This document shows, in pieces, positions 64 to 50,530 of a stretch of DNA of 64,000 nucleotides (positions within the stretch are counted from its first letter, which is position 1; each line of letters opens with the position of its first letter). The stretch spans positions 167,976-231,975 of the IMG/VR virus record IMGVR_UViG_3300042934_000547, one strand, 5' to 3'. The translations under genes were made by a program, and so were the position numbers. The notes under the pieces are model-generated. The model saw only the letters and a program-made list of their open reading frames with translations, was not told the DNA's origin and made no database searches.

Positions 64-738
64 TCATATATAACGCTCCTTACTAATCAATTTAATATAG
101 TTTTCGACGATTTCCTTTTTCATGCTGTTATGAGAATCTGTTCTATCAGAACTATACTTATTATTCATATTGTCCTCGATAAGCAGATTTCTGGTAATTT
201 TATCTATTTTATCGTTAAAATAAGAAATCTCTTTAATAAAATTAATATCTGTTATGTTTTGTTTATTTGATTTGTTGAATACATTTCTAGCATTCTCTAA
301 TGATGAATCACTCTGCTTCACATGACCTTTTTGATGGTAAAATCTTAAATCTAAACCACTATCTAGTATTAATTTCATACAGTATATAAGTTTTTCTTGA
401 TTTTTAACAATCCCATTACCACCATAGAAGTTTCCATCTTTAAATCTCCAATTATGTACCCATTCTCTCAAGCTATTTATACAAATTAATGAATCAGAAA
501 AAATATTAAATTTGGTAGTACCATACGTATTATGAAAGTTTTTTGCTATTTTGATACCCAAAATTATTCCTTCTAGTTCCCCTCTGTTATTTGTTGTGTC
601 TGAAATCACTTTGCCAAAAGCATTAGTGTATTCTTTTGATTTTATAATAGCTCCTGCACATGAATATGTAGTACCCTTATATATTCTCACTGAGGCGTCG
701 GTAAAAATATTTACCCTGTTTTCGTAATCTAATTTCAT
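64..738 (-). CDS. rnhA: Ribonuclease HI
   Basis: Motifs IFTDAS, TTNNRGELEG, IFSDS, VKNQ, HQKGH, NDKID match the RNase HI D-E-D-D catalytic pattern; AGGAGG RBS. Confidence 0.92.
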   Translation of the reverse strand: MKLDYENRVNIFTDASVRIYKGTTYSCAGAIIKSKEYTNAFGKVISDTTNNRGELEGIILGIKIAKNFHNTYGTTKFNIFSDSLICINSLREWVHNWRFKDGNFYGGNGIVKNQEKLIYCMKLILDSGLDLRFYHQKGHVKQSDSSLENARNVFNKSNKQNITDINFIKEISYFNDKIDKITRNLLIEDNMNNKYSSDRTDSHNSMKKEIVENYIKLISKERYI

Positions 739-792
739 TTTGTTGTCCTCCTAAAATATTATCGAATATATAATATATACTTCTAATATGTT

Positions 793-7516: not shown

Positions 7517-8131
7517 ATGAATATAAAAAATAAGATTAGGTTATTCTTTCATAAATATAATTTAGATAATATATTTCTATTCTTTAATAATGATATAGAT
7601 TTAGAAACTAAAACGACCATTCTGAGTGAGGAAGAAATATTAAGCAATCCTTTAGCTAGTTTATGTCAGCACCCATTTTATTCTATTATAGATATAAGCT
7701 TTGTTAATCAAAAAATAGTAATCAGTCTAGAGTCAATTATAACTCTAACCATATTACATGATTGTATTCAGAATATTTATAATAGAACGTCTGACTATAT
7801 ATTCACATTTGACATCACACGGTCTTATAAGATAGATAAGCTCGTAATCGATGTGGAAATACAATTCAGTACGACTCAGCAGGCTTATAAGTATTTACTC
7901 CTTTTACTGACTGACCTTAACCTAGAACTTATAGAAAGTGTAACTGTAGAACCTAAAAATATTTACGAGCATGATGATCTACTAAAATATTTCAATTCAT
8001 ATCAAGTAAATTATGAATCATATATACGATATTTGGATTCTAGTAAAACTAAACCTCAAATCAAATATATTATTGATGTACTTCATAATCATAATGATAT
8101 GATTAAAAATATTCGTGATTTAATACATTAG
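7517..8131 (+). CDS. Hypothetical protein
   Basis: 204-aa ORF, AGGAGG RBS, AACA-N6-TA at 7479-7490. Confidence 0.65.
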   Translation: MNIKNKIRLFFHKYNLDNIFLFFNNDIDLETKTTILSEEEILSNPLASLCQHPFYSIIDISFVNQKIVISLESIITLTILHDCIQNIYNRTSDYIFTFDITRSYKIDKLVIDVEIQFSTTQQAYKYLLLLLTDLNLELIESVTVEPKNIYEHDDLLKYFNSYQVNYESYIRYLDSSKTKPQIKYIIDVLHNHNDMIKNIRDLIH

Positions 8132-8143
8132 AAAAAAAAATAA

Positions 8144-8169
8144 ACCTCTAGGACTTTAATCCTAGAGGT
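8144..8169. terminator. Bidirectional intrinsic terminator
   Basis: acctctagga-ctttaa-tcctagaggt between convergent genes, flanked by A/T tracts. Confidence 0.8.
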
Positions 8170-8180
8170 ATCTTTATTTT

Positions 8181-9200
8181 CTATAAATCCGTATATATTT
8201 CTTCTAATAGATTTCCATCCATATCATAAATTTTTCTATGCTTTTGATACTTATCAAATCTTACAGCTTCCTTATTCCATTTAGAATAAATAAACTCTTT
8301 AAAATGACATTCTATATCATTATAAATGAAATCTCTTTCCATCATCAACTTAGAGAAGTTTCCATCATGGAAATATATACTTCCACCATCAGGCATGATG
8401 ATATTTTTGTATTCATAGTCGTCGATTTTTTCTGTTACCATTACTACATCATGTGGTAACGATTCTATAGTAACGGTGTGCCCCTGATTAGCAGCTACTA
8501 TTGTGTAAGAACTAGGACGTCTTTGAAGTACCTCAAAATTATCAGTTGGTTTTAATAATATCTTATCCCTAATTTTACTATAATTGATCTTACCATAAAC
8601 TGATGAAACTAAATCTCTGAATGAAGAGTAATTACCATCTGTTAAAATAGATGTACCGTTCTCAGTGATATTAGCTAATAAGCCACTCTTGCTATAGAAA
8701 TATTTAAACTCTTTCTTAGCTGGTATTATGACTATCATTCGTTCCACATCGTGACGATATGATGTGTATGAATATATCATATGAGATACAGTACGTTGGT
8801 CGTTTAAACCTAAAACGCTTTTAACTAACAACAATTTGGTATCCATATTATTATAAATGCTTATTGTTGCCTTACCAGTAACTTCATCATATATTATAAC
8901 AGTATTACCATATTGCACTCCCTTTATTTCACGTTTAGTAACTTCGCCAGTAACAAGATTTGTCGTCCTATGTATTTGGTGTGGTAAATCTTCACGCAGA
9001 CTCATGTATTCAACATTTAATTCAGTTGATGCTACAAAGTCAGTCTTTGTCTTTATTCCACCATAGTTATTATAAATCTCTTCCTTTAGAAGTTTACCCT
9101 GAGACTCTTCGGTCCCCTGTTCATAAAGATATGTATGTCGTAACTTTGATTGTCCATCTACTAATGCATATACTTTCCTTAATTCATTTTTTCCTTCCAT
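8181..9200 (-). CDS. Divergent YD-repeat-like beta-rich protein (paralog 5, weak)
   Basis: YNNYGGI, FYSKSGLL, IYDMDGNLL; likely start MEGKN at 9200 after AAGGAGG. Confidence 0.5.
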   Translation of the reverse strand: MEGKNELRKVYALVDGQSKLRHTYLYEQGTEESQGKLLKEEIYNNYGGIKTKTDFVASTELNVEYMSLREDLPHQIHRTTNLVTGEVTKREIKGVQYGNTVIIYDEVTGKATISIYNNMDTKLLLVKSVLGLNDQRTVSHMIYSYTSYRHDVERMIVIIPAKKEFKYFYSKSGLLANITENGTSILTDGNYSSFRDLVSSVYGKINYSKIRDKILLKPTDNFEVLQRRPSSYTIVAANQGHTVTIESLPHDVVMVTEKIDDYEYKNIIMPDGGSIYFHDGNFSKLMMERDFIYNDIECHFKEFIYSKWNKEAVRFDKYQKHRKIYDMDGNLLEEIYTDL

Positions 9201-9361
9201 TTGTATCCTCCTTATATAACCTTTTAACTTATCGTTTATATAATATATACCCATATCAAATTTTGAAAATAAAAGGGAGGAGTGAAATTAATCACTCCCA
9301 ACAAGATGATTTTTATTACTTTACTTATAACCGAGACTTATGATATAGTTATATATATTTA

Positions 9362-9535
9362 GAAAAAAAAATATCGGGTAGGAAATCAATCCTACCCATT
9401 AGGCATGTGTAAAAGTAATTGATTTATATGAATTAAAAAAGGAACGTTGTTGATGGAAAACAAATTTTAGGAGTTATACATAACAAATTGTCTTCACATG
9501 CCTATTTTATTTAACTGAAATTTTCTTATTCAATT
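9362..9535 (-). ncRNA. Candidate ~170-nt small RNA
   Basis: AACA-N6-TA at 9535-9546(-); closing stem 9400-9409/9495-9504; terminator hairpin 9376-9397 plus T-tract; no ORF. Confidence 0.5.
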
Positions 9536-9555
9536 ACCTTATTGTTATTACCCTA

Positions 9556-9669
9556 TTAATTATTATTACGTTGAATTGGTATAATATTATGAGTAAATTT
9601 GAATAGTAATTGTTCAGACTCTTCCACCATCAATGCCTCTAGTATGAATTTCTTTTCATTAATTGTCAT
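9556..9669 (-). CDS. 37-aa hypothetical protein (not in ORF track)
   Basis: MTINEKKFILEALMVEESEQLLFKFTHNIIPIQRNNN*, directly after the ATP-cone gene, AAGGA RBS. Confidence 0.45.
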   Translation of the reverse strand: MTINEKKFILEALMVEESEQLLFKFTHNIIPIQRNNN

Positions 9670-9672
9670 AGT

Positions 9673-10521
9673 TTATTTTTCCTTTATTATGTATTCTAAA
9701 TTATTCAGTTTAAGTTTATTAGCATAACTAAATAATTCAGTGGCAAATATATCATCACATTGTTTATGCCAATTTATTTTTTCTTCATCTGTCATTTCCA
9801 ACAGCGTACAAAATTCATCATATCTATCTATATATAGATATACCTTAGATTTATTATCCCATACATCCAATGTTTTATCTAATCTCACTTTACGAACAAT
9901 AAATCGTGCCAGTGTTTTTAATACATTGATATATAATTCTTTATTGAAACGTCCTGATTCTTCAAATAACTGAAATACATTTACAGTAAATTTATTGTAT
10001 CTAATTCTATCAAGACTAATATATCCACTGTATATATATTTAAATAAATCGTATCGCTCATTTATCTGTATTGGATAACTAAAATTATTCATATTAATAT
10101 TGTGAGTACATTTCGATACCCAATCATTAAATTTCTTTGAATTAATATTAGTATGTAATATCTCAGTTACCGTATAACTAGGTTGTATATTGATGAAATT
10201 ACTTAATGGTATTTCATCTACACAATTCACAGGAACATAGGAATTTGCTCGGTTATTATTATAACAGACGTAATACTTAAGAGCCATAGGTTCATATTTA
10301 ATGAGTAATCGTTCAATAGCCTCCTGTATCTCACAGCTTTGAACTATATCCCTAGAACCAAATTCTTTTTTGATTTTTCCAGAGATAGTATAAACTAATG
10401 AAACGTCCTCTAGATATTTTTTAGGATTGCAAGCCACCAAAACTGAATTTAAAATAATATTGAGTTTTTCTTTATTAAATGGTTCTACCGCCCCGTTCCG
10501 TTTAATAATTAAAGTAATCAT
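9673..10521 (-). CDS. ATP-cone domain protein with degenerate RNR-like C-terminus
   Basis: IIKRNGAVEPFNKEKL...EIQEAIERLL ATP-cone signature. Confidence 0.75.
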   Translation of the reverse strand: MITLIIKRNGAVEPFNKEKLNIILNSVLVACNPKKYLEDVSLVYTISGKIKKEFGSRDIVQSCEIQEAIERLLIKYEPMALKYYVCYNNNRANSYVPVNCVDEIPLSNFINIQPSYTVTEILHTNINSKKFNDWVSKCTHNINMNNFSYPIQINERYDLFKYIYSGYISLDRIRYNKFTVNVFQLFEESGRFNKELYINVLKTLARFIVRKVRLDKTLDVWDNKSKVYLYIDRYDEFCTLLEMTDEEKINWHKQCDDIFATELFSYANKLKLNNLEYIIKEK

Positions 10522-10676
10522 ATTGTAAGTCTCCCTTCTAATGCCTATTAATTAAATTATCTTTATGTTTGTTTTTTCGTTAAATATTCTACAGTTACAT
10601 AAATCAATATCTCCGTGAAATTTATTATTTTATACCATTGCAACATTATAATAGTTGTGGAAGACTAAAGGAGAAT

Positions 10677-11489
10677 ATGATGATGGAAAATAAAATAGAT
10701 GTACAAGGATATAAGTATTATTCAATAGAAGATAATATTATTAGAATCTCTAAAGATAAAAATGTTATTAATGATAAGTGGACTAAACTGAAAATGGATG
10801 CATTAATGGCTTTTCATATAATATCGAATGATGATGGAGCCAAATATATTATGGTTGCTATGTACAATAATGGTGACTATAAAAATCCTGTTCTGATATT
10901 TGTTTCAAATTTTATAAATGAATGGGACGCAAATATTGGTAATAGAATACTAGGGAAAACATTCAACAGGTATACTGGAATTGATGAAAATTTATTTAAG
11001 GTTATAAAAATAGAATATTCCGAATATGTTGCTATATATAAGGAAGATTCATTTAAAAATATTTATGACCAACTTATTAATAAAGATAAGTTTAATGAAG
11101 TCCTTAAAGCATTTAATTCTGCTTTTATAGAAATGGGTAATCTTAATATATCTCTACCTGATAATCTTTATGATTATATGAAACACGGTGCATTTGATTA
11201 TGACTACGATAATGAATTAGGCATTGAGCAACTTGAATTTGACCTTGAAATAGATAATGAGAGACTAATCAACCAATTAGACTTAGAAACATTTCTCGGT
11301 CATAAATTAATTCAACCTGTTATAGTCAAATATAATCGAATTATAGTTTTAGAAGATATCAAAAAAGACTATGGATTATTCCGTGACGCCACTGATACAT
11401 TATATCTAGTTACGTTTATTCGTGGAGATATAATAGATGATGAAAACCTAGATTTAATCGAGTGGAATAAGAGCTTTGGAGTGAGGTAA
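10677..11489 (+). CDS. Hypothetical protein
   Basis: AAGGAG RBS before MMMENK; AACA-N6-TA at 10642-10653. Confidence 0.6.
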   Translation: MMMENKIDVQGYKYYSIEDNIIRISKDKNVINDKWTKLKMDALMAFHIISNDDGAKYIMVAMYNNGDYKNPVLIFVSNFINEWDANIGNRILGKTFNRYTGIDENLFKVIKIEYSEYVAIYKEDSFKNIYDQLINKDKFNEVLKAFNSAFIEMGNLNISLPDNLYDYMKHGAFDYDYDNELGIEQLEFDLEIDNERLINQLDLETFLGHKLIQPVIVKYNRIIVLEDIKKDYGLFRDATDTLYLVTFIRGDIIDDENLDLIEWNKSFGVR

Positions 11490-11560
11490 TAAAATATATT
11501 ATAAATATATATTATAACAATGAATTAAACAAATTTAAAATTTTAGGAGGAACAACAAAG

Positions 11561-12280
11561 ATGGATATGGATAATACATTCATGAACCCAAACCAAGTGA
11601 ATCAAAAGGAAATAAAGGATTACGAAGCAGAATTCGATACTCCAATTACATTAAGTGAGCCGATGAGATTTTATATCGAGACCACTACACGTTTAGGTAT
11701 GGAGATATTAAAGAAGTATACTCCAATTTTCGGCGACTTAATCGGTACGTTTATTACGGTTAATACCAAAGGCGATCTTGAAGTATCATTACAGTTTGAG
11801 AAAAAAGGTGCTGGCAATGTTGTAGACTTATTCAACAACAGTGACTTCAACCAAAGAATTACAGCGTTCAATACGCTTAACACAACAAACAGAATCTTCG
11901 ATTTAGATGATACTGTTAAAGGAACTTTCCAAAGATTCTTAATCAAAGCTAATCCAATGCAGAAAATTGATTGGAATCAATATATCAGACAAATAACAAT
12001 CAACAACAACACTATGAGTGGAAAGCACACAATTCTTGAATTGGCTCACATTTCACTTGATAGATTGCTGCCTGAATTAATATTTGTTGGAGAAGATGCT
12101 AAGAAAAAACGCACTACTCAGATTAAGACTATTATAACTGGTTCTGTAAATCCAGCTTCACCATTATCAAAAAATTGGTTCGTGAAGATAGATATGCTGG
12201 ATCAAGCTACTGTTGATTTCGTATCTAAAGAAGCAGGAATTGTTACAAGCACTTACGGCTTGGATATGATAACACTCTAA
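11561..12280 (+). CDS. Hypothetical protein, probably abundant and early
   Basis: AGGAGG RBS, tandem TATATTATA motifs at 11494-11516, own terminator 12289-12311. Confidence 0.65.
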   Translation: MDMDNTFMNPNQVNQKEIKDYEAEFDTPITLSEPMRFYIETTTRLGMEILKKYTPIFGDLIGTFITVNTKGDLEVSLQFEKKGAGNVVDLFNNSDFNQRITAFNTLNTTNRIFDLDDTVKGTFQRFLIKANPMQKIDWNQYIRQITINNNTMSGKHTILELAHISLDRLLPELIFVGEDAKKKRTTQIKTIITGSVNPASPLSKNWFVKIDMLDQATVDFVSKEAGIVTSTYGLDMITL

Positions 12281-12338
12281 TATAGCAGAGGGTATACATT
12301 ATGTATACCCTTTAATTTTTCTCTATGGAGGTACACTA

Positions 12339-12668
12339 ATGGCTTTCGAAGACAAACTCGAATATGACATAGAACAAGAATTAGGTGTATTTGATGAAAA
12401 AGGAAATACATCACTTGAATTAAGAGTTGTAAGCTGGAATAAGAAGCCTGCTAAACTTGAATTAAGAAAATGGGTAACCAACAGCGATGGTCAAAATCCA
12501 AATAAAGGATTCTCATTCTTAACTGATGAAGGTCCGCATCGTCTTGCTGAACTTTTAGTTGAAAATAATTTTGGAGATACAAAAACTCTAAAAGCTCTTT
12601 TAATTGATAGGGATGATTACGATGAATCTGAATCAGATTATGACTATTTGGATGAAGAAGAAGAATAA
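12339..12668 (+). CDS. PC4/YdbC-family ssDNA-binding protein
   Basis: IEQELGVF..LELRVVSWNKKPAKLELRKW..KGFSF pattern plus acidic tail. Confidence 0.75.
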   Translation: MAFEDKLEYDIEQELGVFDEKGNTSLELRVVSWNKKPAKLELRKWVTNSDGQNPNKGFSFLTDEGPHRLAELLVENNFGDTKTLKALLIDRDDYDESESDYDYLDEEEE

Positions 12669-12766
12669 CAATTAATGGTGGAACCTGTAATCGGGTTCCA
12701 TCATTTTTTTTTGTATTATGACAATATTCGCATCAAGATAAGAATGTAAAAATTAACTTTTTTGAA

Positions 12767-12787
12767 TATATATTATAGATATGAATA
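12767..12787 (+). promoter_or_regulatory. Early-type promoter motif TATATATTATA(GATATGAATA), representative copy
   Basis: Also at 769-779(-), 3304-3312(-), 4112-4122(-), 6988-6998(-), 9239-9249(-), 11506-11516(+), 28967-28977(+), 53320-53330(-), 63647-63657(+), each upstream of a co-oriented gene. Confidence 0.75.
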
Positions 12788-12880
12788 GTAAATAATAAAT
12801 AGTAGTATATTCTTAGTTGAATATATAAACTCACATAACTATTCTTCTTTCATAAGAAGTGAGTAATAGAGGAGAATGAA

Positions 12881-13015
12881 ATGAAAGTAGCAATATTTAT
12901 TTTAGGAGTAATGATTTTAACAGCAATAATACCAGCACCATATAATGTAGTTGCAGCTGTTGCATTTGGATTTATATTATCTGGTATAGATTTAAAGAAG
13001 AAAAATGATAATTAA
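12881..13015 (+). CDS. 44-aa membrane protein (not in ORF track)
   Basis: GAGGAG RBS; MKVAIFILGVMILTAIIPAPYNVVAAVAFGFILSGIDLKKKNDN. Confidence 0.6.
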   Translation: MKVAIFILGVMILTAIIPAPYNVVAAVAFGFILSGIDLKKKNDN

Positions 13016-13093
13016 ATATGAATAATAGAACGATAAAATAATATAGCGGGAAATAAGAATGCTATATTATTTTTTATCTAAAAGGAGATAAAG

Positions 13094-13279
13094 ATGAATA
13101 CAAAGAAGAGTAATACAATATTTTTATTAACAGTTGTATTGAGTTTGTGTTATAGTATGCTTATATTTGGGGCAATACAACTTGCTAAAATATACGGTAA
13201 ATTACCATTATTTATAGTAGGAATGGTTATGTATTTAATTGGAAAATTTATATATTTTAAAAGGATGAAAAATGACTGA
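13094..13279 (+). CDS. Small two-TM membrane protein
   Basis: AAGGAG RBS, two hydrophobic segments. Confidence 0.6.
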   Translation: MNTKKSNTIFLLTVVLSLCYSMLIFGAIQLAKIYGKLPLFIVGMVMYLIGKFIYFKRMKND

Positions 13280-32313: not shown

Positions 32314-35300
32314 TTATTGTGTTAGTGGTAACATTGCAGCGATTAATGCCGTTAAACTATTGTCTCCTGTTCCACCCTTACCACCCTTTTCATTGATGAT
32401 ATTGAGTAATGCATTTGGGTTTATAGAGTTTCCAGAAGAAGACTTCTTAGTAAGTTCTTTAATATCGTTCTCAGTGATATTTATATTTAATTTTTTGGTA
32501 ATTAAATTCAATATGTCTTGGAGAAGCTCATTCGTTCTACCAATATTAGATACTGACATTACAATCCTTGTAAGAAGTTCAATTAAGTTGGCATCAATTG
32601 TACCAGCGTTGATTGTTGTGTTAATATTTTGACCACCGAAATTACTTTTCATTATATTCTCACGGTCACGCATTGACAATTCGGCAACTGATGACATATC
32701 AGCATCCATAAACTCAAAACTATTAGGATTATCCATAGCATCTAATTTACGGCTCTCATCAGCAAGTTCAAATGCACTCTTAATAACAGGAGATGTTTTA
32801 CCGAACCCACCAAATCTACCAGATTTCTTAGCGTTACCAAATCCACCTATCTGAGCGTTAGGATCAAAGTTCTTAACCCTAGATGCCATTATATCCGATA
32901 TAGTACCAGACCATTTTGGATCAGATGCGTAGTATTTATTCACACCACCCAAACTTCCATCGATATAATATTTTCCACCCGGTGTTAAATAGTTATTCTT
33001 TAACAATCTTGCTGTCTCATCGAAATTTTGAGCCGGGCTATCGAATGTTCTGGCTGATTTATATGGACTGCTATCATAAGCTGCATAACCAGAGAAATTA
33101 TTTTTATTTTTGGCTAAGGCACTTGTACCCCATCCACTTTCAAGAGCGACTAATGAAGATAAGAATAATGGATTTACACCAAATTTATTGGCTGCATTAG
33201 CTAAATCATTGGCATGTTTCTTCAATGGTTTATTTGCATAGGCACCAGTAAAGAATTTGTTTTGTAAATCTGCCCCACTTAATGAACCAAATCCACCACC
33301 ACGTCTTCTAACAAATCCCATACCAGCAGGCATTTGAGCTAGATTAGATGTATTGACAGCAGTTGAATTGATATTAGTGTAACCACCTATAGCATTAGCG
33401 AATGAAGCTGCTAAACCAGTAGGCATTTGAGTTCCACCATTCTCACGTGTCCAGTTAGCGATTTTTGATAAGATATTCTCATGGGTTTCGAATCCGTATT
33501 TAGTTCCAACAACTCCCATAATAGCATCACCGAATAAACCAATACCAGACGCCATTTTACCCATCCAATCAAATAATCCACTTTCTTTATTACCACCTTC
33601 AGCAATAGTTGGAACATTTGCGAACCCTGCACGATCGGTTAAACGTAAGTTCTTACCATTAATGTCAGTATAAGCCCACATGCTCTTAGTTGTTCCATTT
33701 TTGAATAATGCATCCTTTGAAAACTCTGTACTTTCTCCTTCACCCATAGGGTCATTTACCCATACACTATTATCACTAGCCATACCAGTTACAACTGAAT
33801 AATGACCACCCGGAGTATATGGAGTAGTACTAATATTTCCTTGACCATTTATAACAACTGGTCTACCCGCTTCAATATTTGCTTTTAATGAATCCCAAGT
33901 ATTACTAATATTCTGTCCCTTTACGTTGTAATCACTTAATTGTGGATTACTACTGCTAGAGAACATGTCATGAGCAGTTCCTGCATTATCAATCCAATAA
34001 CGTAATCCCATATCTGTTAAATCTAGCGGTGATATAGGTTTATTGTTAAATGCAGATGTAATCATTGACATTGCTGTTGGTCCACATGCAGCATCACCAT
34101 ATGTGTAATTTTGAGCATAATACAAATCTTTCCATTGAGGATCATTTTGGGACCAATATGGGAAACCATTAAGCAATCTTAATTGGTTATTAAATGATAC
34201 GTTTTCACCAACCGTAGTTGCTTTTCCATCTAGGTATTCTTCATAACCTCTCCACCTGTTGTATATTGCATCTACTCCCGTTTGTTGTTCTAATGCCTTC
34301 CTTAATTCTTCATTATGAGCATTAGTTTTTTGATAATAATCTGGTGCTAAAGATTGTTGATATTCAGTATATTTCTTCCAATAATCAGTATTCTGAGATA
34401 TTGGAGTACCCTTTGGCGTCGTTGATATCCGTCTAGAATTTGATGTCCTATTCGCTGGTTTACCTTTATTATTACCGAATCCTCCACCAGTTAAATATTG
34501 TTTCGAATTTGATGAAGTTCTCGGATTTATGAATTTAAACTTACTATTACCGAATCCTCCACCAGTTAAATATTGTTTCGATGAATTTGATTTACCACCC
34601 ATCCCAACTACTGTTGAATCACCATCTTCGATTATATAACTATCAGCGAGTTCTCTCTTGGTTTGAGATTTAGGCACTGATGGAACTTTATCTAGATACT
34701 TATTCTGTAATTGAGCCATTGTTCTGCTATCTTCAGTTATATCTAATTCGCCATTCCATGCATCATATAACCATACCGCAAGTTTTTGAAGGAAGTTATA
34801 TCCTAAGAATGATGTTGTTACTAAGTTGACAATTTCGAGAATCCATACAGCAGGAGCTTGTAATAAAAATTGCATCACTCCTGATATTGCTTGCATTTTT
34901 GCATCAACATCTTCTTTTGGTACTCCAAACCATTTAGCTGCACCTGTCTTTGATGCACCCCATGCTCCAAATCCAACCATGAATACTAGATTCACAATTC
35001 CACCGGTAGCAATACCAGCAACATCTCTACCAGATTTCTCAGCTATTTTAGCTGCAATTTTGGTATTACTGAAGTATTTATGACAGCTAGAAAATGTATT
35101 TTTGATAAATGCACTAAGTCCTTTTTGACCAAAGTTAGGCATGAATTTTTTAACCACTTTGAGGATACTTTCGATAACTGGATCTAATAATCCAACAAAC
35201 CAAGTAACTAGTTTACCTCTAGAACCTTCAACAGCAGTTCTTATACCTTTCTTGCTTATATTTTTAGCTGTGACTTCTGCACCCTCTTCTAATACTTCTT

Positions 35301-38300
35301 TAGCACCAACTTTAGCAGCACCTTTTGTTGCTTCTTGCATACTTTCATTTAAGACCTTATCTGCTGCTTTTTTGGTAACTTGTTCAGCACCTTTACCAGT
35401 TGCTTCTTCAACGCCTTCGATTATTATTTTTTCGCCGGTCTTCTTCAATGCACCCTCTGCGACTGTTTCAGTGGCTTCTTCGGCAACTTTCTTACCAAAT
35501 AATCCTTTGATGCCCTTCCATGCACCTTTGACACCGTCTTTAGCTTTTCCTACTAAAAATCCACCAGCAGCACCTGCTCCAGTTGAAATCAGACTAGTAC
35601 CATAACCAGTAGCTGCTCCGACTCCCCATTTAGCTACTTTCCAACCAGTGTATATTTTTAGGAAATCTAACAAATGTTCTTTATTTGCCACCATAATATC
35701 CCACATGTTCTGTAGTATGATAGGCATATTTTCTATTATCTTTTGACCTATTCCTAGAATACCTTCTTTAATCTTATCTAAGAATGTAGGTAATTTTTCA
35801 GTTAGAAATGGTTTAATATGACTAGTCCAGATTTCTCCGAATTTATCTCCAGCTTTACCAGCAGCTTCAGCTGGATTATTCCATATCCATTCCATATTTT
35901 TACCAAATCCAGTATTACCCAACCATTTTGACCAGATAGTTTTAGCAGCCTTCACACCTAAGGTACCGAGTAGCATTTTACCCAAGAATGGACCAACGCC
36001 TTTTAATAAATTTCCAACAAATCCTAGACCATGAGTAACCTTGTCTTTTATATTTGTTGTAGCTTTACCAAAAGCACTTTCACTAATACCAGTTATCATG
36101 GATTTTAATTTACCCCATTGCTTGAAGTTCTTATCCTGAATTGGTCTCCATTCACCACTTGAATCCTTATCGTATTTAATAGGAATTCCTTCATCTGTGA
36201 ATATTGTTATAGTTTTACTTTCAGCATCATAAGAACCCTTAGAGTATTTTGTTAATTCCTCTTCAGTCATCTTATTAGGGTCATAGTAACTACCACCATT
36301 TAATATTTCTTGATGGCGTTTAGTCTGTAAGTCTAAAGTTTCTTGACCTATTGTTGTTCCAGTATCAGGTACACCATTTTTGGATTGAAGATTAACAACA
36401 TTTGATTTAGCTGTCTTCTCCTCTAATGCCTTAAATTTAGCTCCATCTTTTCCATGTACCATGAAATCACGTTGAGCTTCGAGTGACTCTAATATCTGGT
36501 TTTGAATGCTAGTTTGTTCTTTAGCTATCTCATTACCTTCTTCAGCAACAAGTGTAGCTCCATCCTTCGGTAATTTCTTTGCATCCATTTCTTTTTTATA
36601 CTCAGCATAAGTCTTAAATCCTCTTTGTTTAGCAAAGGTATTACTTTCGGATAATAGATACTCCATACCTTTTAAAGCCTGAGAATTACCGAATGAATTT
36701 TTAATACCCTTTGTGTATCTTAATTCAGATTCACGGAACTTTTCTTCTTCTGTGTCGAGTACGTTAAATTGTTTTCTATATCTCTTAATAAAATTAGCTT
36801 CGCCTTTTTCAATGGCTTTATCCATCTTATTTTTAGTCTTTAGATATAATTTTTCAACTTGGTCAAACGTGTTAAACCATTCAGCTCTGTCCATAGGACT
36901 CTTTAAATCAACTAAACCACGTTCATACTCGTTTTTCATTGCGTGATAACGTGCTTCGATTTCATCAAATCCACGTTTATCTCTATTTTGCCAGAACTTA
37001 GTCAGAGAGTTTTGTTTCAGTTTTTCTCTTTCTGTTTCCATCTCTTTAGTTATTCTAGTTCGTTTATCTTCTACATTAACTTTGAATTGGTCTCGTATTC
37101 CTTGTCTGGTTCTCTGAGCTTTACCCGCAATACTACGTTGAGCATCAGATTGCATAAAGTTTGGACCTAAAAGTTTACGTAGCCATGGGTATTTATTAGC
37201 AGAGTATCTTGGGTCAATACCTTGAGCAGCTTCAGCCTTAGCTTGTTCTATCTCACTTTGTAATTCATAGTATTCATCCTCAGACATCTTCTCAGTAAAC
37301 TCCATCATGTTTTTATCATAACGATGGAATTTATCTCTACCATGTAATACACCTTGGGTACTACCCATCACACCTAATCCTAGTCCTAAAGCTGGATTTA
37401 TAGCTCCACCGCCAATAACCCCAAATAGAGTTTTTAATATTCCACCCTTAGAAGTTAATCCCGGTCTGAAATATTTATTATTTCGTACTCTAAATGTCTC
37501 ACGTTCTTCTGCTGTCATGTAATCAGCATCACCTTGACGTATATGCTTAGCCCTAAGTGATTTGCTACTTAATCCTAATGCACCTAAAACTCCATTTGTA
37601 ACAGCACCGAATAGATTAATTGGAGTACTCACAACACCCTTAATTAAAGCTCCAAGTGGTTTGAATAGGAATTTAGTCATAAATCTTTTAATTGGTCCAC
37701 CAATGGTTTCATCAAATAAACCTTTGACATAATTACCTAATTTCTTTCCAACTAATTTCAGTTCTTTTCCAAATGGCTGTAAAGCATACAAGAATGGATT
37801 CTTTATTTTCTTATCGAAGAATTCTTTAAATCCATCTTTCATACCAGATATCATTTTCTTAAATGGACTAGTTATAGCTTCTCCGACAATAGGTATTAAA
37901 CCATTTTCACGTTTCTTAGTAACTGGGTCCCATTTACCAAATATCATTTCTCGTACTGTATCATTTGTTGAGAGTGCTCCAAGAGTTCCTCCGAGTAAAG
38001 TACCACCAACTAAACCAAATGGTCCAATAAAGCTTCCGATAGCTCCTATAGCCGCACCACCCAATGTCTTTGGTAATGCCTTTTTAAAGGTTTCCTGACT
38101 TTTCTTACTAAATAAACCGTTATCATCAATACCATCACCGAATAAGAACTTTTGAGCTCCTTCATTATTCTTGGCAAATGCAATAGCAGAACCAGCTAAT
38201 AAACCAGTGATAGGTCCACCCGGTACAAATGGTAATATGGACATTAAAGCTCCACCAACACCAAGTTTGAGTGTATCTGGTGCATATTTGTTAAAGGTTC

Positions 38301-41300
38301 TAACAAGTTCAGCCGGAATCATACCATCATCAGCTCTATTACCCTTAGCATCTTTAGTACCGAATAATTTATTTTGTAAAGTTTCACTATTTTTAATGAT
38401 ATTAACACTAGCACCCACAGCAGCACCAAGTAACGGTCCACCAATGACACCCGGAATCAATCCAATAGCTCCACCGATTAAAGCTCCTGAAACTCCTTCA
38501 GGTAAATGATCTAAAACTTCATCATAAACCTTTCTAGAATTAAGCTTAAGGTTTTTCTTAAACTCTTCTTCCTTACCTTGTTCAATACCAGTAAAAGCTG
38601 ATACAGCTGTAGATATTTCATCAGCCATTTCTCTTTTTATAGCTCCGAATAAACCTCTTTCGCCATAATTTTCTTTATCCCATTCATGGGCTTTATCGAG
38701 ACCTTTACCGAATTTATTACTAGCTTTATTTTTAAGATCATCAAGGTTATCAAAATCCATAGTCTTATAAAATGCATCAAATACCTTGGTCTTGATATTA
38801 TATAAATTCTTATTATCACTTTCGTAAGCATAAGGTTCTTGAATAACACCCATTTGCTCCCTAAGTGTTTTTCTAATAATATTATTATCAAAACTAAAGT
38901 TTTTAAGATTAGGATCTTTTGCAGTAGGAATTGCCTTTTTAGCTTTTCTTCTAGCTGTATCGATATCTTTGATAGCTTTATTAAACTGCTCTCTAGTGAG
39001 TTGTCCTCGTTTATACATCTCACCAAAAGCCATAGATAGAGTATCATACATACGATTTGTGCCTTCGATGTATCTTAAACGCTTAAGTGATAGAACTACT
39101 TCCGTTCCGTCTTCACCAAGTGTTGCCACTGTTGGTTCACTAACAACGCCTTGAGCAGCAAAAGCAGGAATCTTCTCTGCACCCAATAATTGATTAGTTA
39201 TCCTGTCCTGTGCATCCTTACTATGATTATTGATGTACGGTACATTTTTTGTAATCCTCTTAGCTTGTTCTTTATCAAGCAGATTCATTGGTAAAAAGTC
39301 ATAATCATCATCTGTTAACTTACCAAAAACTCCACCACTAAAAGCATTTGCTTGTATAGGACCCTGTTTATTCTTAATTTTACCATCATGAATTAATTTT
39401 CTGATAGCTGGAATATTACGAGGATCTTGATAATTATCTTGTGTTATTATACTATCAAGGTTTGGAGCTGATATACCTCGTTTTTGTAAAATTGTTCTCC
39501 ACTTATCCCTAGTGTATTGAAGTGGATTAATTGAACCTAAATTGCTTTTAGCAATTCCAAGGGCATTTAACTTTTCAGCTTCTCTATCATCTGCATCATC
39601 GAATAACTTCATTAATGACTGATAATCGCCATAATTTGTTCTTTCCCTTAGATTACCACTTCTATCCTTAGCCCAAGTATTAAAGTTTGTTGCATTAGAT
39701 AGAACTTTTTGTGTATTTAAACCACCCTCTGATGATAAATCTAATCTATCAGGAGATGTTGGTGTAAACTTAGATACGAATTTTGCCATAGCTGGGTGAT
39801 GAGATAATCTCGTATCAATTATCTGTAATAAATTCACCATATCGGATACTTTAGCCATCATGCCTTTCATGAATATAGCTGGATTAGCCTGCATATTTCC
39901 GAATACAGATTGGTTATTTTCATTATCTTTAAACTTAGAACGAATATCGTTTTGTTCTTGTACGTAGTGAAGTTGTTGTAATAACGCCGAGCTGGATTGT
40001 TTATCAAGTTCATCGAACGAGGTCATAGCACCAGATGTACCAAACAGATCATTGTACATTTTTTCTTTTTCTTTTCTTATACTAAATGTACCACTTGTAC
40101 GTCTATATGAACCTATTTGTTTACGACGTTGCTCTATAGCTAATAATCTATCTTTAAGTCTAGTAATTTCTATGTCGATAGCTTTATTACGGTTCTTATA
40201 ATAATCAACTCGTTTCTTATATCCAGATGATGCTTGAGCAGTTTTTCTTTTATCACCTGATTGTTTAGATTTATTAACTTCACTTAACCAAGCACTTAGT
40301 GATTTATTATTGGACTCTTTTTCAGACTCCAACTTTTTAATCCTTTGGGAGATTTCTCTTGATTCCTTAGTCAATGTATCAAGTTCTTTGAGATAATCAT
40401 CATAATTCTGGCTATTATCAACAAATTTACTCTTTAATTCTTGAGTTCTACTAGGAGTTAATCCAAATCCAGCTGTTTCTAATCCCTGATTTACAATATC
40501 AGAATAATCAATTTCTTTCTCTTTCTTATCTCCAACGAACCAGCTAAACATTCCTCGTGTATCTTCACCGATTTGTTTAGTAAAGTCACCCATAACCCCG
40601 CCGTGTCTCCATCCTTTAGCATCTTTCTCGCCAAATAGATGTGTCATAAACTCGTCGGCTTTATCTTTAGCTTTACCTTTCCATTCGTCAACCTTTTCAA
40701 AAACACCCCAATCTTCTAATCTTTCACGGAGAGGAGTTAGAAAATAATCATTAATTTTATCATTAAGTTTTTCGAATGTGTTACGAATACTAACAACCAT
40801 CATATCCATATATCCACGGACTTTTTCGCCTTGATAGTTAACTTCTTCACCACCATAGAAGAATTCATAAATTCTTTTATCAACCTTACTAAGCATTTTA
40901 GTGATGGTTTCGGTAGGTTTACTAAGAACTTCGGACATTTTATCTGATGTGTATGTAAATTTATCAACAATGCCATCGGCAGCAATAAGACCATCTAAGA
41001 AACCAATCTTTTTACCAGCTTCATCATTAGATAAATCATATTGACCATCTTCTTTTTTCTTCATCCATGGATAAATTTTTCGGTCTTTCTCCCTAGCATT
41101 TTCTAGAGCTTTTTGTTCGATTTCAGCAACCTTTCTTTTACGTTCTAATTTACTTTCTGTATTATCACTAAAGGTTCCATCTTCATTTTCATCATCAAGT
41201 AAGCCAGAAAATAATGGTCTACCGTGTTCATCGTCCCATTCTCTATCTTCTTGAAGTTTTCGTTTAGCATTGATATTTAGATTTTGATAATAAGTAGCTT

Positions 41301-43509: not shown

Positions 43510-43612
43510 AACTCGATTTCTCCTTTCTATATTACTGTATTGCCTTATGAGTATGTTGAAAAGAAACAAAAAGTGGGAGTACAACTTAATGTACTCCCAA
43601 TTGATCTAATTA

Positions 43613-44128
43613 TTATTTATTCCAACTTGGGTTTTTACCATACACTCTAAGAGTTCTATGTGCAGGGCATTTAACCATTTGATTGTTGCTAGGGCTGCGA
43701 TTTTCTTTTTCTTTAACATTTTTGAATGCTATTGAGATATTATAATCATCTCCTGCACCTATCTGCAACTTTCTTCCTGTTTCCAAATAGCCGAGTGTGA
43801 AGTCTTTTGTAATATTAAGTAATTTATCAGCATTAGCGTTACTAAACTCATGATTTTCAACAAGTTTATTAGCTTCTTCTAAGCTGATTTTAGCAGCTTT
43901 AGAAATTATATCAGCAGATAAATCTCTCATATCCTGTGCTGGTGTTGCACAATAAGCAACTCCCTTAGAATCTCTTCTCTCTGGTAAATATTCAGAGTCA
44001 TTTATCATACTTCTCATAAACGCTCTTTCATTTTTACCTGATATTGAAGTAACCTTTTCACCATTTGCTTTAACTGGTAAGCTATCATTGATTTCTTTTA
44101 CCAGTGCTTTAGTATCATATTTGTTCAT
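43613..44128 (-). CDS. HU/IHF-like DNA-binding protein with N-terminal extension
   Basis: LETGRKLQI..KNVKEKENRSPSNNQMVKCPAHRTL parallels the HU arm (R.GRNP.TGE.I.IPA). Confidence 0.6.
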   Translation of the reverse strand: MNKYDTKALVKEINDSLPVKANGEKVTSISGKNERAFMRSMINDSEYLPERRDSKGVAYCATPAQDMRDLSADIISKAAKISLEEANKLVENHEFSNANADKLLNITKDFTLGYLETGRKLQIGAGDDYNISIAFKNVKEKENRSPSNNQMVKCPAHRTLRVYGKNPSWNK

Positions 44129-49951: not shown

Positions 49952-49969
49952 ATTAAACAAAGCTTATAT

Positions 49970-49993
49970 AGAGTAGGATTCAAATCCTACTCT
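49970..49993 (+). terminator. Intrinsic terminator after RNAP gene
   Basis: agagtaggat-tcaa-atcctactct plus T-rich tract. Confidence 0.8.
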
Positions 49994-50026
49994 AATTTTT
50001 ATTTAAATTTCCTATAACAATATAAT

Positions 50027-50525
50027 AGATATTGTTTGATTATAAATGCTTAAACCGGTTAGCTTTTAATCGATAAGACAGTATCCATATAGTATTTAGA
50101 TATGCCGGCAGCCCCTTATAATGGACCATTAGTAAACTAAAATGATCATTGATGGTATTGTGGGCTTATGCTGGCAAAATCTTACTTCCAATTATGCACT
50201 TCGAGTTAAAGTAGCATGGTAATATAGTGTCCCCCGGGTAAGTCGTCCCCTACCCTTCTTGATACCGTGCTACTAAGTGTATAATGTAACATTTGGATAA
50301 TATTTAGGATTTGGTTACCGTTTAACCCATTCTAAATTTTATTATATATTTTTTCTTCTTTTACTACACCTCATTTTGTTAGGTGCATTGGTTTTCTCCT
50401 TTCTCTATTTGTATGACAAGCACTTAAAATAGCGTAATAAGAATAGCTACTTATTACGCTATATTGGGTGTGAGTATTAATAATTTGAAAAAAAAATAAT
50501 GAGGTAGGATTAATTTCCTACCTCT
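50027..50525 (+). ncRNA. Candidate large structured ncRNA (~450-500 nt)
   Basis: ORF-free, locally GC-enriched; AACA-N6-TA at 50016-50027; multiple stems with recurrent G-U pairs on the + strand; hairpin 50501-50524 plus T-rich tract. Confidence 0.65.
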
Positions 50526-50530
50526 TCTTT

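What the first reader, a model, noticed from the sequence alone, without database searches (positions are those of the whole stretch)
9362..9546. Late-promoter small RNA candidate exposing anti-Shine-Dalgarno loops
Seen: on the minus strand, AACA-ATAAGG-TA (9546-9535) is followed by ~170 nt with no ORF and then a terminator (9397-9376 plus T-tract). A perfect 10-bp stem (taggcatgtg 9400-9409 / cacatgccta 9495-9504) extends imperfectly, with a G-U pair favouring the minus strand. It closes a pyrimidine-rich loop reading ...AACUCCUAAAAUUUG...GUUCCUUUUUU.... The 12-mer CUCCUAAAAUUU is exactly complementary to aaattttaggag, the RBS of the early gene at 11561, and 10 nt match the RNase H RBS (attttaggag). 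Inference: with the 50-kb RNA, this suggests a system of late sRNAs that pair with RBSs to shut off early or host translation.
Basis: partly seen in the sequence, partly recalled or inferred. Interest (0 to 1): 0.75.

Follow-up and report, generated by a model that had tools for sequence, protein, structure and literature searches.

The report
Orphan late-promoter small RNA candidate
A 170-base stretch of a giant soil phage looks like its own late-expressed non-coding RNA (promoter, stem, terminator, no gene), but its supposed "ribosome-site-masking" pairing is no better than chance, so it is a modest, untested small-RNA candidate.

Summary
The genome is a 232-kb AR9/PBS1-like jumbo phage. It uses AR9's two published promoter types: early AAATATATATTAT-N6-G and late AACA-N6-TA/G.

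For a separate ~170-nt late RNA (TSS A9535, 3' end about 9365, minus strand):
- The late-promoter match at 9546 ranks about 46th of 464,000 positions, and a second match sits at 9572. About 0.014 such sites are expected per 200 nt of non-coding sequence.
- The terminator lies 157 nt past the nearest stop codon. In 62 of 72 genes that distance is 32 nt or less.
- No ORF with a ribosome-binding site lies between promoter and terminator.
- The fold is moderately better than shuffles on the minus strand (z -2.2 for the body).
- A close relative seen in sequencing runs differs by only 3.1% here, against 5.3% in neighbouring genes.

The headline claim fails its own test. The 12-nt anti-SD complementarity is real and matches three early-gene RBSs. 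However, 16-22% of CTCCT-containing controls do as well, and duplex energies give P about 0.2. No transcript evidence and no informative homologues could be obtained.

Verdict: a plausible orphan late ncRNA that overlaps the 3' UTR of the upstream operon. Its function is unknown, and the "RBS shut-off system" is speculative.

The parts
9535..9546 (-). Late-promoter core AACA-ATAAGG-TA. By the AR9 rule, the predicted TSS is A9535.
   Evidence: Read. The PWM score is 11.5, rank about 46 of 464,000 positions. 0.014 such sites are expected per 200 nt. The consensus and TSS rule come from PMC5312081.
9561..9572 (-). Second late-promoter-like site, AACG-TAATAA-TA, inside the last codons of the 37-aa ORF. 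It is a possible tandem or alternative start at A9561.
   Evidence: PWM score 12.9, rank 30. It has AACG rather than AACA; G is rare at that position (3 of 60 model sites).
9513..9535 (-). Weak 5' AU-rich hairpin: 7 bp with a 9-nt loop.
   Evidence: MFE and centroid structures.
9491..9504 (-). 5' arm of the long-range stem, UAGGCAUGUGAAGA.
   Evidence: I9. Predicted unpaired probability 0.01.
9400..9414 (-). 3' arm of the long-range stem, UUUU-A-CACAUGCCUA. It forms 10 perfect pairs plus 4 more, including one G-U.
9415..9490 (-). Large U/C-rich, weakly structured loop enclosed by the stem. It holds CUCCUAAAAUUU (9473-9462) and GUUCCUUUUUU (9445-9435).
   Evidence: Mean unpaired probability is 0.74 for both motifs. 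Complementarity to RBSs is shown, with controls.
9363..9398 (-). Intrinsic terminator: a 9-bp stem with 5 GC pairs and loop UUGAUU, followed by AUA and U9.
   Evidence: It has the same shape as the terminators that follow genes elsewhere in this genome.
9278..9299 (-). Second terminator-like hairpin, GGGAGUGA-UUAAUU-UCACUCC, followed by UCCCUUUUAUUUU. It lies between terminator 1 and the early promoter and is probably a backup insulator.
   Evidence: No promoter-like site lies between the two hairpins.
9233..9256 (-). AR9-type early promoter GGGTATATATTAT-N6-G (TSS G9233) of the downstream early gene. That gene's true start is ATG 9200, after AAGGAGG.
   Evidence: Early PWM score 19.7. Sequence. 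Logan gene call of 339 aa.
9556..10521 (-). Upstream late operon: an ATP-cone protein (10521-9673) plus a 37-aa ORF (9669-9556). Its late promoter AACATAAAGATA is at 10569. No terminator lies between this operon and 9398.
   Evidence: Pfam ATP-cone 2.1e-9. PWM score 10.6. Terminator scan. Gene calls.

Best explanation
The stretch is most likely a small non-coding transcription unit of an AR9-like jumbo phage. The phage's non-virion RNA polymerase would start at A9535, or possibly at A9561 from a tandem site. It would stop at the hairpin and U-tract at 9398-9363, giving an RNA of about 170 nt.

The same sequence is also carried as the long 3' UTR of the late ATP-cone operon, because no terminator separates the two.

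The predicted RNA has four parts: a weak 5' hairpin, a stable 14-bp long-range stem, a floppy U/C-rich loop of about 76 nt held open by that stem, and the terminator hairpin.

If it acts in trans, the single-stranded CUCCU and UUCCUUU motifs are the likeliest contact surface for purine-rich ribosome-binding sites, as in the C-rich-loop sRNAs of Firmicutes.

Shown here: the sequence anatomy, the genome-wide use of the promoter motif, the abnormal spacing, and the absence of an ORF.
Inferred: that transcription starts there, that the RNA accumulates, and what it does.
For: - The genome encodes two beta-like and at least one beta'-like RNAP genes. Its nearest relatives are the deoxyuridine-DNA jumbo phages LPJP1, phiR1-37, S6 and PBS1.
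- Both published AR9 promoter consensus sequences recur here in the right places.
- Site 9546 scores 11.5 and site 9572 scores 12.9, against 0.014 and 0.005 expected per 200 nt.
- These two sites form the only short 'late promoter then terminator, with no gene start' unit in 232 kb at PWM scores of 9.6 or above; the next best candidate, AACA at 43687 on the minus strand, scores 9.5.
- The stop-to-terminator distance is 32 nt or less in 62 of 72 genes. Here it is 157 nt from the 37-aa ORF and 274 nt from the ATP-cone gene.
- No ORF with an SD lies in the unit.
- Fold z is -3.6 for the whole unit and -2.2 for the body on the minus strand, against -1.0 on the plus strand.
- Where a gene has both promoter types, the late one lies close to the gene. 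Here the late site lies far upstream, behind two hairpins, so it is unlikely to serve gene 9200-8181.
- A 93-97% identical relative in run X2 has 12 substitutions in 384 nt over 9153-9536 (3.1%). The adjacent coding pieces have 224 in 4232 nt (5.3%).
- Intergenic sRNAs are documented in another jumbo phage, 201phi2-1, which has 11 sRNAs, three of them intergenic (PMC11512511).
Against: - There is no direct transcript evidence. The metatranscriptome run that holds this phage has no contig over 9257-9443. Contigs cannot show absence, however.
- The promoter PWM was trained on predicted sites, not mapped ones, and 14 of the 50 sites scoring 11.4 or more lie in coding DNA.
- The candidate lacks the preferred T at -3 and has G at two spacer positions where G is uncommon.
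- The positions of the 12 substitutions in the relative are not known, because the table was truncated and the tool is capped. The RNA body itself may therefore not be conserved.
- In the only more distant relatives found (L004 and L005, 28% protein identity, same gene order), the equivalent spacer is only 52 nt and has no site with a PWM score of 9 or more. That fits a 3'-UTR element better than a separate gene.
- There is no Rfam match even at E up to 5, and no paralogue in the genome.
Confidence: 0.45

Rival explanations
1. It is only the 3' UTR of the late ATP-cone / 37-aa-ORF operon. The AACA-N6-TA matches are chance or inactive. The long stem, the loop and the terminator simply form an unusually long structured 3' end, which may stabilise the mRNA or, together with hairpin 9299-9278, insulate the downstream early gene from late read-through.
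For: - No terminator lies between stop codon 9556 and 9398, so operon transcripts must cover the region.
- L004 and L005 have, at the syntenic place, a short 3' spacer with a hairpin (loop CCUUUCC) and a terminator, but no good late promoter.
- 28% of high-scoring PWM sites lie in coding DNA.
- Tandem hairpins sit ahead of an early promoter.
Against: - Two high-scoring late sites lie within 40 nt exactly where the ORF ends (P about 0.01-0.02).
- 157-274 nt is far outside the usual 32 nt or less from stop to terminator, and nothing requires such a spacer.
Confidence: 0.33
2. The unit is a late trans-acting sRNA whose exposed CUCCUAAAAUUU and UUCCUUUUUU loops pair with Shine-Dalgarno regions. 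The best fit is the conserved early module AAAAUUUUAGGAGG. Pairing would shut off early (or host) translation late in infection. The RNA would be one member of a set of late anti-SD RNAs.
For: - The 12-nt perfect complement matches three early-gene RBSs. Their proteins are not paralogues of one another.
- TTTTAGGAG is enriched at early genes: 5 of 37 against 4 of 204, P 0.005.
- Early TIRs pair slightly better than the others: -14.6 against -13.2 kcal/mol, P 0.02.
- Both motifs are predicted 74% unpaired.
- Three RBSs matched at 12 nt or more is seen in only 3.5% of shuffles and in 4 of 194 other natural CTCCT sites.
- Two other orphan late non-coding units hold longer matches to the canonical Firmicute 16S 3' tail. 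The tail sequence is recalled from general knowledge and the host's own 16S is unknown. The matches are CUCCUUUCU and CACCUCC.
Against: - The best match length and the duplex energies are ordinary for this AT-rich genome.
- The anti-SD core is only 5 nt. Unlike the two larger RNAs, this unit has no 7-mer match to the 16S tail.
- The statistics in favour were chosen after seeing the data, and they rest on one repeated RBS module.
- Only 5 of 37 early genes carry that module.
- The plus strand of the same stretch resembles an SD-plus-spacer module, so the motif could be a mirror image, though that similarity is itself not significant (P 0.46).
- Stoichiometric masking of many RBSs would need a very abundant RNA.
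Confidence: 0.12
3. It is non-functional leftover DNA: a decayed small gene cassette or inverted scrap of an early promoter and UTR module that kept a promoter-like and a terminator-like end.
For: - The plus strand reads AAATTTTAGGAG...ATAACAAATTG, much like the early TIR AAATTTTAGGAGGAAATAACAAAATG.
- The function is unknown and there are no homologues.
Against: - Similarity to early modules is no better than shuffles (P 0.46).
- The region diverges less, not more, than the neighbouring genes in the close relative.
- The stem is intact and strand-biased.
Confidence: 0.1

Closest known systems
AR9 late (nvRNAP) promoters, AACA-(6N)-TA/G (Lavysh et al. 2017, PMC5312081)
   Same: The core motif and spacing are identical. 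In both phages the motif sits a few tens of nt upstream of start codons, and both have a companion early motif AAATATATATTAT-N6-G. AR9 also has late promoters that do not precede genes: 13 are internal and 7 are antisense.
   Different: The RNAP beta-like protein of this phage is only about 30% identical to those of the AR9/PBS1 group. The site is not in front of an ORF. TSS use and deoxyuridine DNA are unverified.
Intergenic sRNAs of jumbo phages found by ONT-cappable-seq (201phi2-1: 11 sRNAs, 3 intergenic; PMC11512511)
   Same: Each is a short promoter-to-terminator unit under 250 nt without a CDS, in a giant phage that has its own multisubunit RNAPs. Function is unknown.
   Different: Those are experimentally mapped transcripts in Pseudomonas phages. 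There is no sequence or structural similarity, and this one is only predicted.
C-rich-loop sRNAs of Firmicutes that mask Shine-Dalgarno sequences (RsaE/RoxS type). This comparison is from general knowledge and was not tested here.
   Same: An unpaired pyrimidine motif is complementary to AGGAG-type RBSs, and the RNA ends in an intrinsic terminator.
   Different: Those have several UCCC/CCCC motifs in small hairpin loops and are conserved across genera. Here there is one CUCCU and one UUCCU in a single large floppy loop. No Rfam family matches even at E up to 5.
3'-UTR-derived sRNAs with an internal promoter (DapZ / MicL type in enterobacteria). This comparison is from general knowledge.
   Same: The promoter sits at the end of the upstream coding region, and the sRNA shares the mRNA's terminator.
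   Different: Those depend on Hfq and have proven targets. Nothing of that kind is testable here.

Membership tests
AR9-type late promoter | AACA, a 6-nt spacer, then T followed by A or G | tested here: met
   AACA-ATAAGG-TA lies at 9546-9535. The consensus is quoted from PMC5312081.
AR9-type late promoter | The same motif is used genome-wide in front of genes of this phage | tested here: met
   T, A and A occur at +10 to +12 after AACA in 56-59 of 95 upstream AACA/GACA sites. Of 39 PWM sites scoring 12 or more, 30 are non-coding and 20-75 nt upstream of a start.
AR9-type late promoter | The phage encodes a non-virion multisubunit RNAP | tested here: inconclusive
   Two beta-like genes and one beta'-like gene were detected. 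Which set is the non-virion enzyme, and whether a gp226-like promoter-specificity subunit is present, was not examined.
AR9-type late promoter | Transcription starts at the last A/G late in infection | not testable with these tools
   No usable RNA reads were available. The read-laying run gave only contigs, with none over the unit in the RNA run.
Trans-acting base-pairing sRNA (anti-SD type) | A discrete, abundant short transcript | not testable with these tools
   Searches found no informative RNA run.
Trans-acting base-pairing sRNA (anti-SD type) | Own promoter and Rho-independent terminator, and no ORF | tested here: met
   This is prediction only.
Trans-acting base-pairing sRNA (anti-SD type) | A single-stranded seed | tested here: met
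   The mean unpaired probability is 0.74 for both pyrimidine motifs.
Trans-acting base-pairing sRNA (anti-SD type) | Target complementarity beyond what composition gives | tested here: not met
   A match of 12 nt or more through AGGAG occurs in 22% of flank shuffles and 16% of natural CTCCT sites. A 12-mer or longer occurs anywhere in 38% of shuffles. Duplex energy gives P 0.2.
Trans-acting base-pairing sRNA (anti-SD type) | Seed and structure conserved in relatives | tested here: inconclusive
   The close relative shows 3.1% divergence over 9153-9536, but the positions of the changes are unknown. The distant relatives L004 and L005 have a different, shorter element with a CCUUUCC loop.
Any Rfam family | Covariance-model score at or near the gathering threshold | tested here: not met
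   There were no hits at the gathering threshold. The best at E up to 5 were 21.6 bits against a threshold of 52, and 18.7 against 41.
Retron msr-msd / MITE-like inverted-repeat element (considered) | An adjacent reverse transcriptase, or multiple genomic copies with terminal repeats | tested here: not met
   The neighbouring proteins have no Pfam RT domain. There is no second copy in the genome. The eight metagenome hits to the arm pattern are unrelated palindromes.

The most novel reading that the evidence does not exclude
AR9-like deoxyuridine-DNA jumbo phages make a set of late, nvRNAP-driven non-coding RNAs. The set would include this 170-nt RNA, the ~490-nt RNA at window 50016-50524, and a ~400-nt RNA at genome 12.2-12.7 kb. 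Each displays single-stranded mimics of the 16S anti-Shine-Dalgarno tail. Together they would titrate or mask the conserved early translation-initiation module (AAAAUUUUAGGAGG...ACAACAAAAUG), giving an RNA-based early-to-late translational switch.
Probability: 0.08. Interest if true: 0.75.

Novelty: new member of a known kind. Interest (0 to 1): 0.3.

Why it matters
If the transcript is real, it would be one of the first non-coding RNAs assigned to an AR9-type late promoter. It would also be a handle on post-transcriptional control in the deoxyuridine-DNA jumbo phages, where no sRNA has a known function.

The firmer gain from this work is contextual. AR9's early and late promoter grammar holds in a phage whose RNAP is only about 30% identical. 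That allows temporal classes, and three orphan late non-coding units, to be predicted from sequence alone.

The specific "anti-SD shut-off" idea would be notable, but it currently rests on complementarity that controls reproduce.

Tried and rejected
- Relatives for covariation. Nothing turned up by megablast, blastn or tblastn against phages. Nothing turned up by protein-pattern scans of viral, metagenome and genome contigs. Homology searches of both flanking proteins returned only the window's own proteins, plus one distant lineage, L004/L005.
- An exact look-up of the 37-aa ORF returned only an identical contig from the same sample.
- An arm-pattern scan found nothing in viral contigs. In metagenomes it found eight unrelated palindromes.
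- Rfam at the gathering threshold and at E up to 5 gave nothing. ARAGORN found no tRNA or tmRNA.
- No early promoter drives the unit, and no promoter lies between the two hairpins.
- A small-protein gene was rejected.
- A dual early-plus-late promoter for gene 9200-8181 was rejected on promoter order, distance and the two intervening hairpins.
- An inverted duplicate of an early promoter/UTR module is not significant (P 0.46).
- A conserved orphan late promoter in L004/L005 was rejected. The AACA is lost in L005, and no site reaches a PWM score of 9.
- The first two duplex-energy scripts hit the time limit. One also used DNA letters, so its energies were discarded.

Full report
WHAT THE GENOME IS

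The window is bases 167,976-231,975 of a 231,975-bp IMG/VR virus record with direct terminal repeats. The record is about 30% GC, and AGGAGG-type ribosome-binding sites precede most ORFs. It encodes a 1448-aa RNAP beta-like protein (PHROG 3148, 3e-132), a second beta-like gene and a beta'-like gene.

The best tblastn matches of the beta-like protein, at about 30% identity, are Listeria phage LPJP1, Yersinia phiR1-37, the Staphylococcus S6/MarsHill group and Bacillus PBS1. These belong to the AR9-like jumbo phages with two multisubunit RNAPs.

No near relative is visible in the phage, viral-contig, metagenome or genome collections.

PROMOTER GRAMMAR

K-mer enrichment in upstream regions gave about 30 copies of AAGTATATATTATAgaTATGAAT. 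This is the published AR9 early consensus AAATATATATTAT-(6N)-G+1 (PMC5312081).

A second signal, AACA-N6-TAA, lies 25-60 nt upstream of start codons. T, A and A occur at positions +10 to +12 in 56-59 of 95 AACA/GACA sites. It equals the AR9 late consensus AACA-(6N)-TA/G, whose last base is the TSS.

A PWM refined on upstream sites gave these counts:
- 39 genome positions score 12 or more. Of these, 30 are non-coding and 20-75 nt upstream of a same-strand start, although only 6.9% of the genome is non-coding.
- 50 positions score 11.4 or more: 33 are in such places, and 14 are in coding DNA.

The PWM is trained on predicted sites, not mapped ones.

THE OBSERVATION

Everything listed is present on the minus strand:
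- AACAATAAGGTA at 9546-9535.
- Perfect 10-bp arms at 9504-9495 and 9409-9400. They extend by four pairs, one of them G-U, after a 1-nt bulge.
- A terminator at 9398-9375, followed by AUA and U9 at 9371-9363.
- No ORF with an SD and an ATG on either strand.
- CUCCUAAAAUUU at 9473-9462 and GUUCCUUUUUU at 9445-9435, both predicted 74% unpaired.

The 12-mer is the exact complement of AAATTTTAGGAG in front of ATG 11561. ATTTTAGGAG precedes gene 64-738, which is an RNase H (Pfam 5.5e-14).

EVIDENCE THAT THIS IS A SEPARATE TRANSCRIPTION UNIT

1. Site 9546 scores 11.5, about 46th of 464,000 positions. A second site at 9572 (AACG-N6-TA) scores 12.9. In Markov sequence with non-coding composition, 0.014 and 0.005 such sites are expected per 200 nt.

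2. Terminators in this genome hug stop codons. The stop-to-stem distance is 32 nt or less in 62 of 72 genes, with a median of about 6 nt. Here it is 157 nt from the 37-aa ORF and 274 nt from the ATP-cone gene.

3. A scan for [quoted passage not shown] finds nothing else above a PWM score of 9.5 within 400 nt. Two longer orphan units exist and are described under "in passing".

4. Where a gene has both promoter types, the late one lies close to the gene. Here the late sites sit 346-372 nt upstream of ATG 9200, behind two hairpins and an early promoter (score 19.7, TSS G9233). They are therefore unlikely to serve that gene.

5. Fold z is -3.6 for 9362-9546. For the body without the terminator it is -2.2 on the minus strand and -1.0 on the plus strand.

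6. Run X2 holds a relative at about 2500x depth. Its contig over 9153-9536 has 12 substitutions in 384 nt (3.1%). The seven adjacent, mostly coding pieces have 224 in 4232 nt (5.3%). The 31-mer word shares agree: 0.35 for 9196-9700 against 0.23 for 8000-12000.

EVIDENCE THAT WEAKENS THE CASE

- No terminator separates the late ATP-cone operon (promoter at 10569, score 10.6) from 9398. The stretch is therefore at least that operon's 3' UTR.
- The only RNA run that holds the phage has one near-identical contig (10272-10529) and nothing over 9257-9443. This is uninformative either way.
- The one distant lineage found consists of Logan contigs L004 and L005. They are 19% GC and carry a 28%-identical homologue of gene 8181-9200.
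- That lineage keeps the same order: late gene, terminator, early promoter, gene. The upstream protein is weakly similar to the ATP-cone protein's C-terminal part (E 1e-4).
- Its spacer is only 52 nt. It folds into a 9-bp AU hairpin with loop CCUUUCC plus the terminator, and it has no late site with a PWM score of 9 or more.
- The AACA seen in L004 is GATA in L005.
- Taken together, this looks like a pyrimidine-loop 3'-UTR element rather than an independent gene. It gives only faint support for a conserved C/U-rich feature at this position.

THE ANTI-SD CLAIM

The 12-mer complement occurs at three early genes: window -59272, window -34985 and 11561. Their proteins are unrelated, but their initiation regions share the module AAAATTTTAGGAGGAAACAACAAAATG.

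TTTTAGGAG is enriched at genes with early promoters: 5 of 37 against 4 of 204, P 0.005.

The controls undercut the claim:
- 38% of mononucleotide shuffles of the 85-nt loop have a complement of 12 nt or more somewhere in the 241 initiation regions.
- With CTCCT fixed, and counting only matches through AGGAG, 22% of flank shuffles and 16% of 195 natural CTCCT sites outside initiation regions reach 12 nt or more.
- The best and top-five duplex energies are not better than controls. P is 0.20 and 0.16 with CUCCU kept, and 0.125 and 0.05 with plain shuffles.
- Only the number of RBSs matched at 12 nt or more (three) is unusual: P 0.035 in shuffles, and 4 of 194 other natural sites. This reflects one repeated module and was chosen after the fact.
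- The anti-SD core is just CUCCU. This unit has no match of 7 nt or more to the canonical 16S 3' tail. That tail sequence is taken from general knowledge of Firmicutes, and the host is unknown.

OTHER READINGS CONSIDERED

- No Rfam family matches.
- No tRNA or tmRNA is present.
- The genome has no paralogue; only the terminator resembles other terminators.
- The neighbouring genes have no RT or other tell-tale domain.
- The plus strand resembles an early SD-plus-spacer module, but no more than shuffles do (P 0.46).
- The arm pattern finds only unrelated palindromes in metagenomes.

CONCLUSION

- About 0.45: a real orphan late ncRNA of about 170 nt that overlaps the operon's 3' UTR, with unknown function.
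- About 0.33: a long structured 3' UTR or insulator only.
- About 0.10: inert leftover DNA.

Orphan promoter-to-terminator sRNAs are already documented in jumbo phages (PMC11512511). This is therefore a new candidate member of a known kind and is of modest interest until a transcript is shown.

IN PASSING

Two larger orphan late non-coding units look more striking than this one.
- Window 50016-50524(+): about 490 nt, fold z -7.6, no Rfam match.
- Genome 12203-12661(+): about 400 nt, fold z -5.8.

Both carry longer 16S-tail-like strings, CUCCUUUCU and CACCUCC respectively.

Noticed in passing
window 49952-50530 (+), unit 50016-50524: A late-promoter-like TATAACAATATAATAG (PWM score 10.0) lies directly after the terminator of the 1448-aa RNAP beta-like gene. 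About 490 nt of GC-richer sequence without an ORF follows, then a bidirectional terminator at 50501-50524. Fold z is -7.6, with 0 of 100 shuffles as good. There is no Rfam hit. It holds an unpaired CUCCUUUCU, which equals 9 nt of the canonical 16S 3' tail. It looks like a large structured late ncRNA of an unknown class.
   Followed up: partly
L006 (G000:C1:12100-12760), i.e. window -155772..-155314, + strand: AACC-N6-TAA (PWM score 9.0) lies 18 nt after a stop codon. About 400 nt without an ORF follows, then a terminator. Fold z is -5.8. The sequence contains GACACCUCCGUUUCU and GACUCCUUUUGG. This is a third orphan late non-coding unit.
   Followed up: partly
window 11522-11563, 738-770(-), and genome sites at window -59272 and -34985: Several unrelated early genes share an almost identical 5' UTR and initiation module, AAAATTTTAGGAGGAAACAACAAAATG. 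TTTTAGGAG occurs at 5 of 37 early genes against 4 of 204 others. Contigs from other runs cross-map to just this module. It may be a conserved translational enhancer for early genes.
   Followed up: partly
whole genome (G000): Both AR9 promoter consensus sequences hold in a phage whose RNAP beta-like protein is only about 30% identical to those of AR9/PBS1, phiR1-37, S6 and LPJP1. They are early AAATATATATTAT-N6-G and late AACA-N6-TA/G. There are about 30-37 early and about 40-60 late sites, which allows temporal classes to be predicted from sequence.
   Followed up: yes
window 9278-9299 (-): A second terminator-like hairpin (8 bp, with tail UCCCUUUUAUUUU) lies 75 nt after terminator 1 and 20 nt before the early promoter of gene 9200-8181. 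No promoter lies between the two hairpins. Its position matches the single terminator of L004/L005, so the 9546-9300 segment could be an inserted cassette.
   Followed up: partly
window 8181-9254 (-): The longest-ORF start at 9254 lies inside the early promoter. The real start is ATG 9200, 6 nt after AAGGAGG, giving 339 aa. The protein has no Pfam or PHROG family. Its only homologues among 1.8 billion representatives are two 325-aa proteins from 19%-GC contigs and repeats in two giant proteins.
   Followed up: yes
L004 2082-2172 and L005 4964-5054 (+): In the distant relatives, the 3' spacer of the syntenic late gene forms a 9-bp AU hairpin with a conserved loop CCUUUCC before the terminator. 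That is four Cs in a 19%-GC genome. It may be an analogous pyrimidine-loop element.
   Followed up: partly
L004 3201-3493 (+): A 290-nt T-rich non-coding stretch (including TTCCTTCCGCTTCC) lies between the terminator of the 325-aa gene and the early promoter of a dUTPase gene.
   Followed up: no
window 12669-13093 (+): A 425-nt gap holds a terminator, then a strong early promoter at 12768 (score 29), and then about 300 nt without an annotated ORF before the gene at 13094. This is either a long early leader or an unannotated small gene or RNA.
   Followed up: no
whole genome (G000): ARAGORN finds no tRNA or tmRNA gene in this 232-kb jumbo phage. Window 32314-43584(-) encodes a single 3756-aa ORF.
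   Followed up: no
window 9673-10521 (-): This late gene encodes a 282-aa protein with an N-terminal ATP-cone domain (Pfam 2.1e-9) and an unknown C-terminal part. A 37-aa ORF follows 3 nt after its stop. The protein has no close homologue in 5.8 billion proteins.
   Followed up: partly
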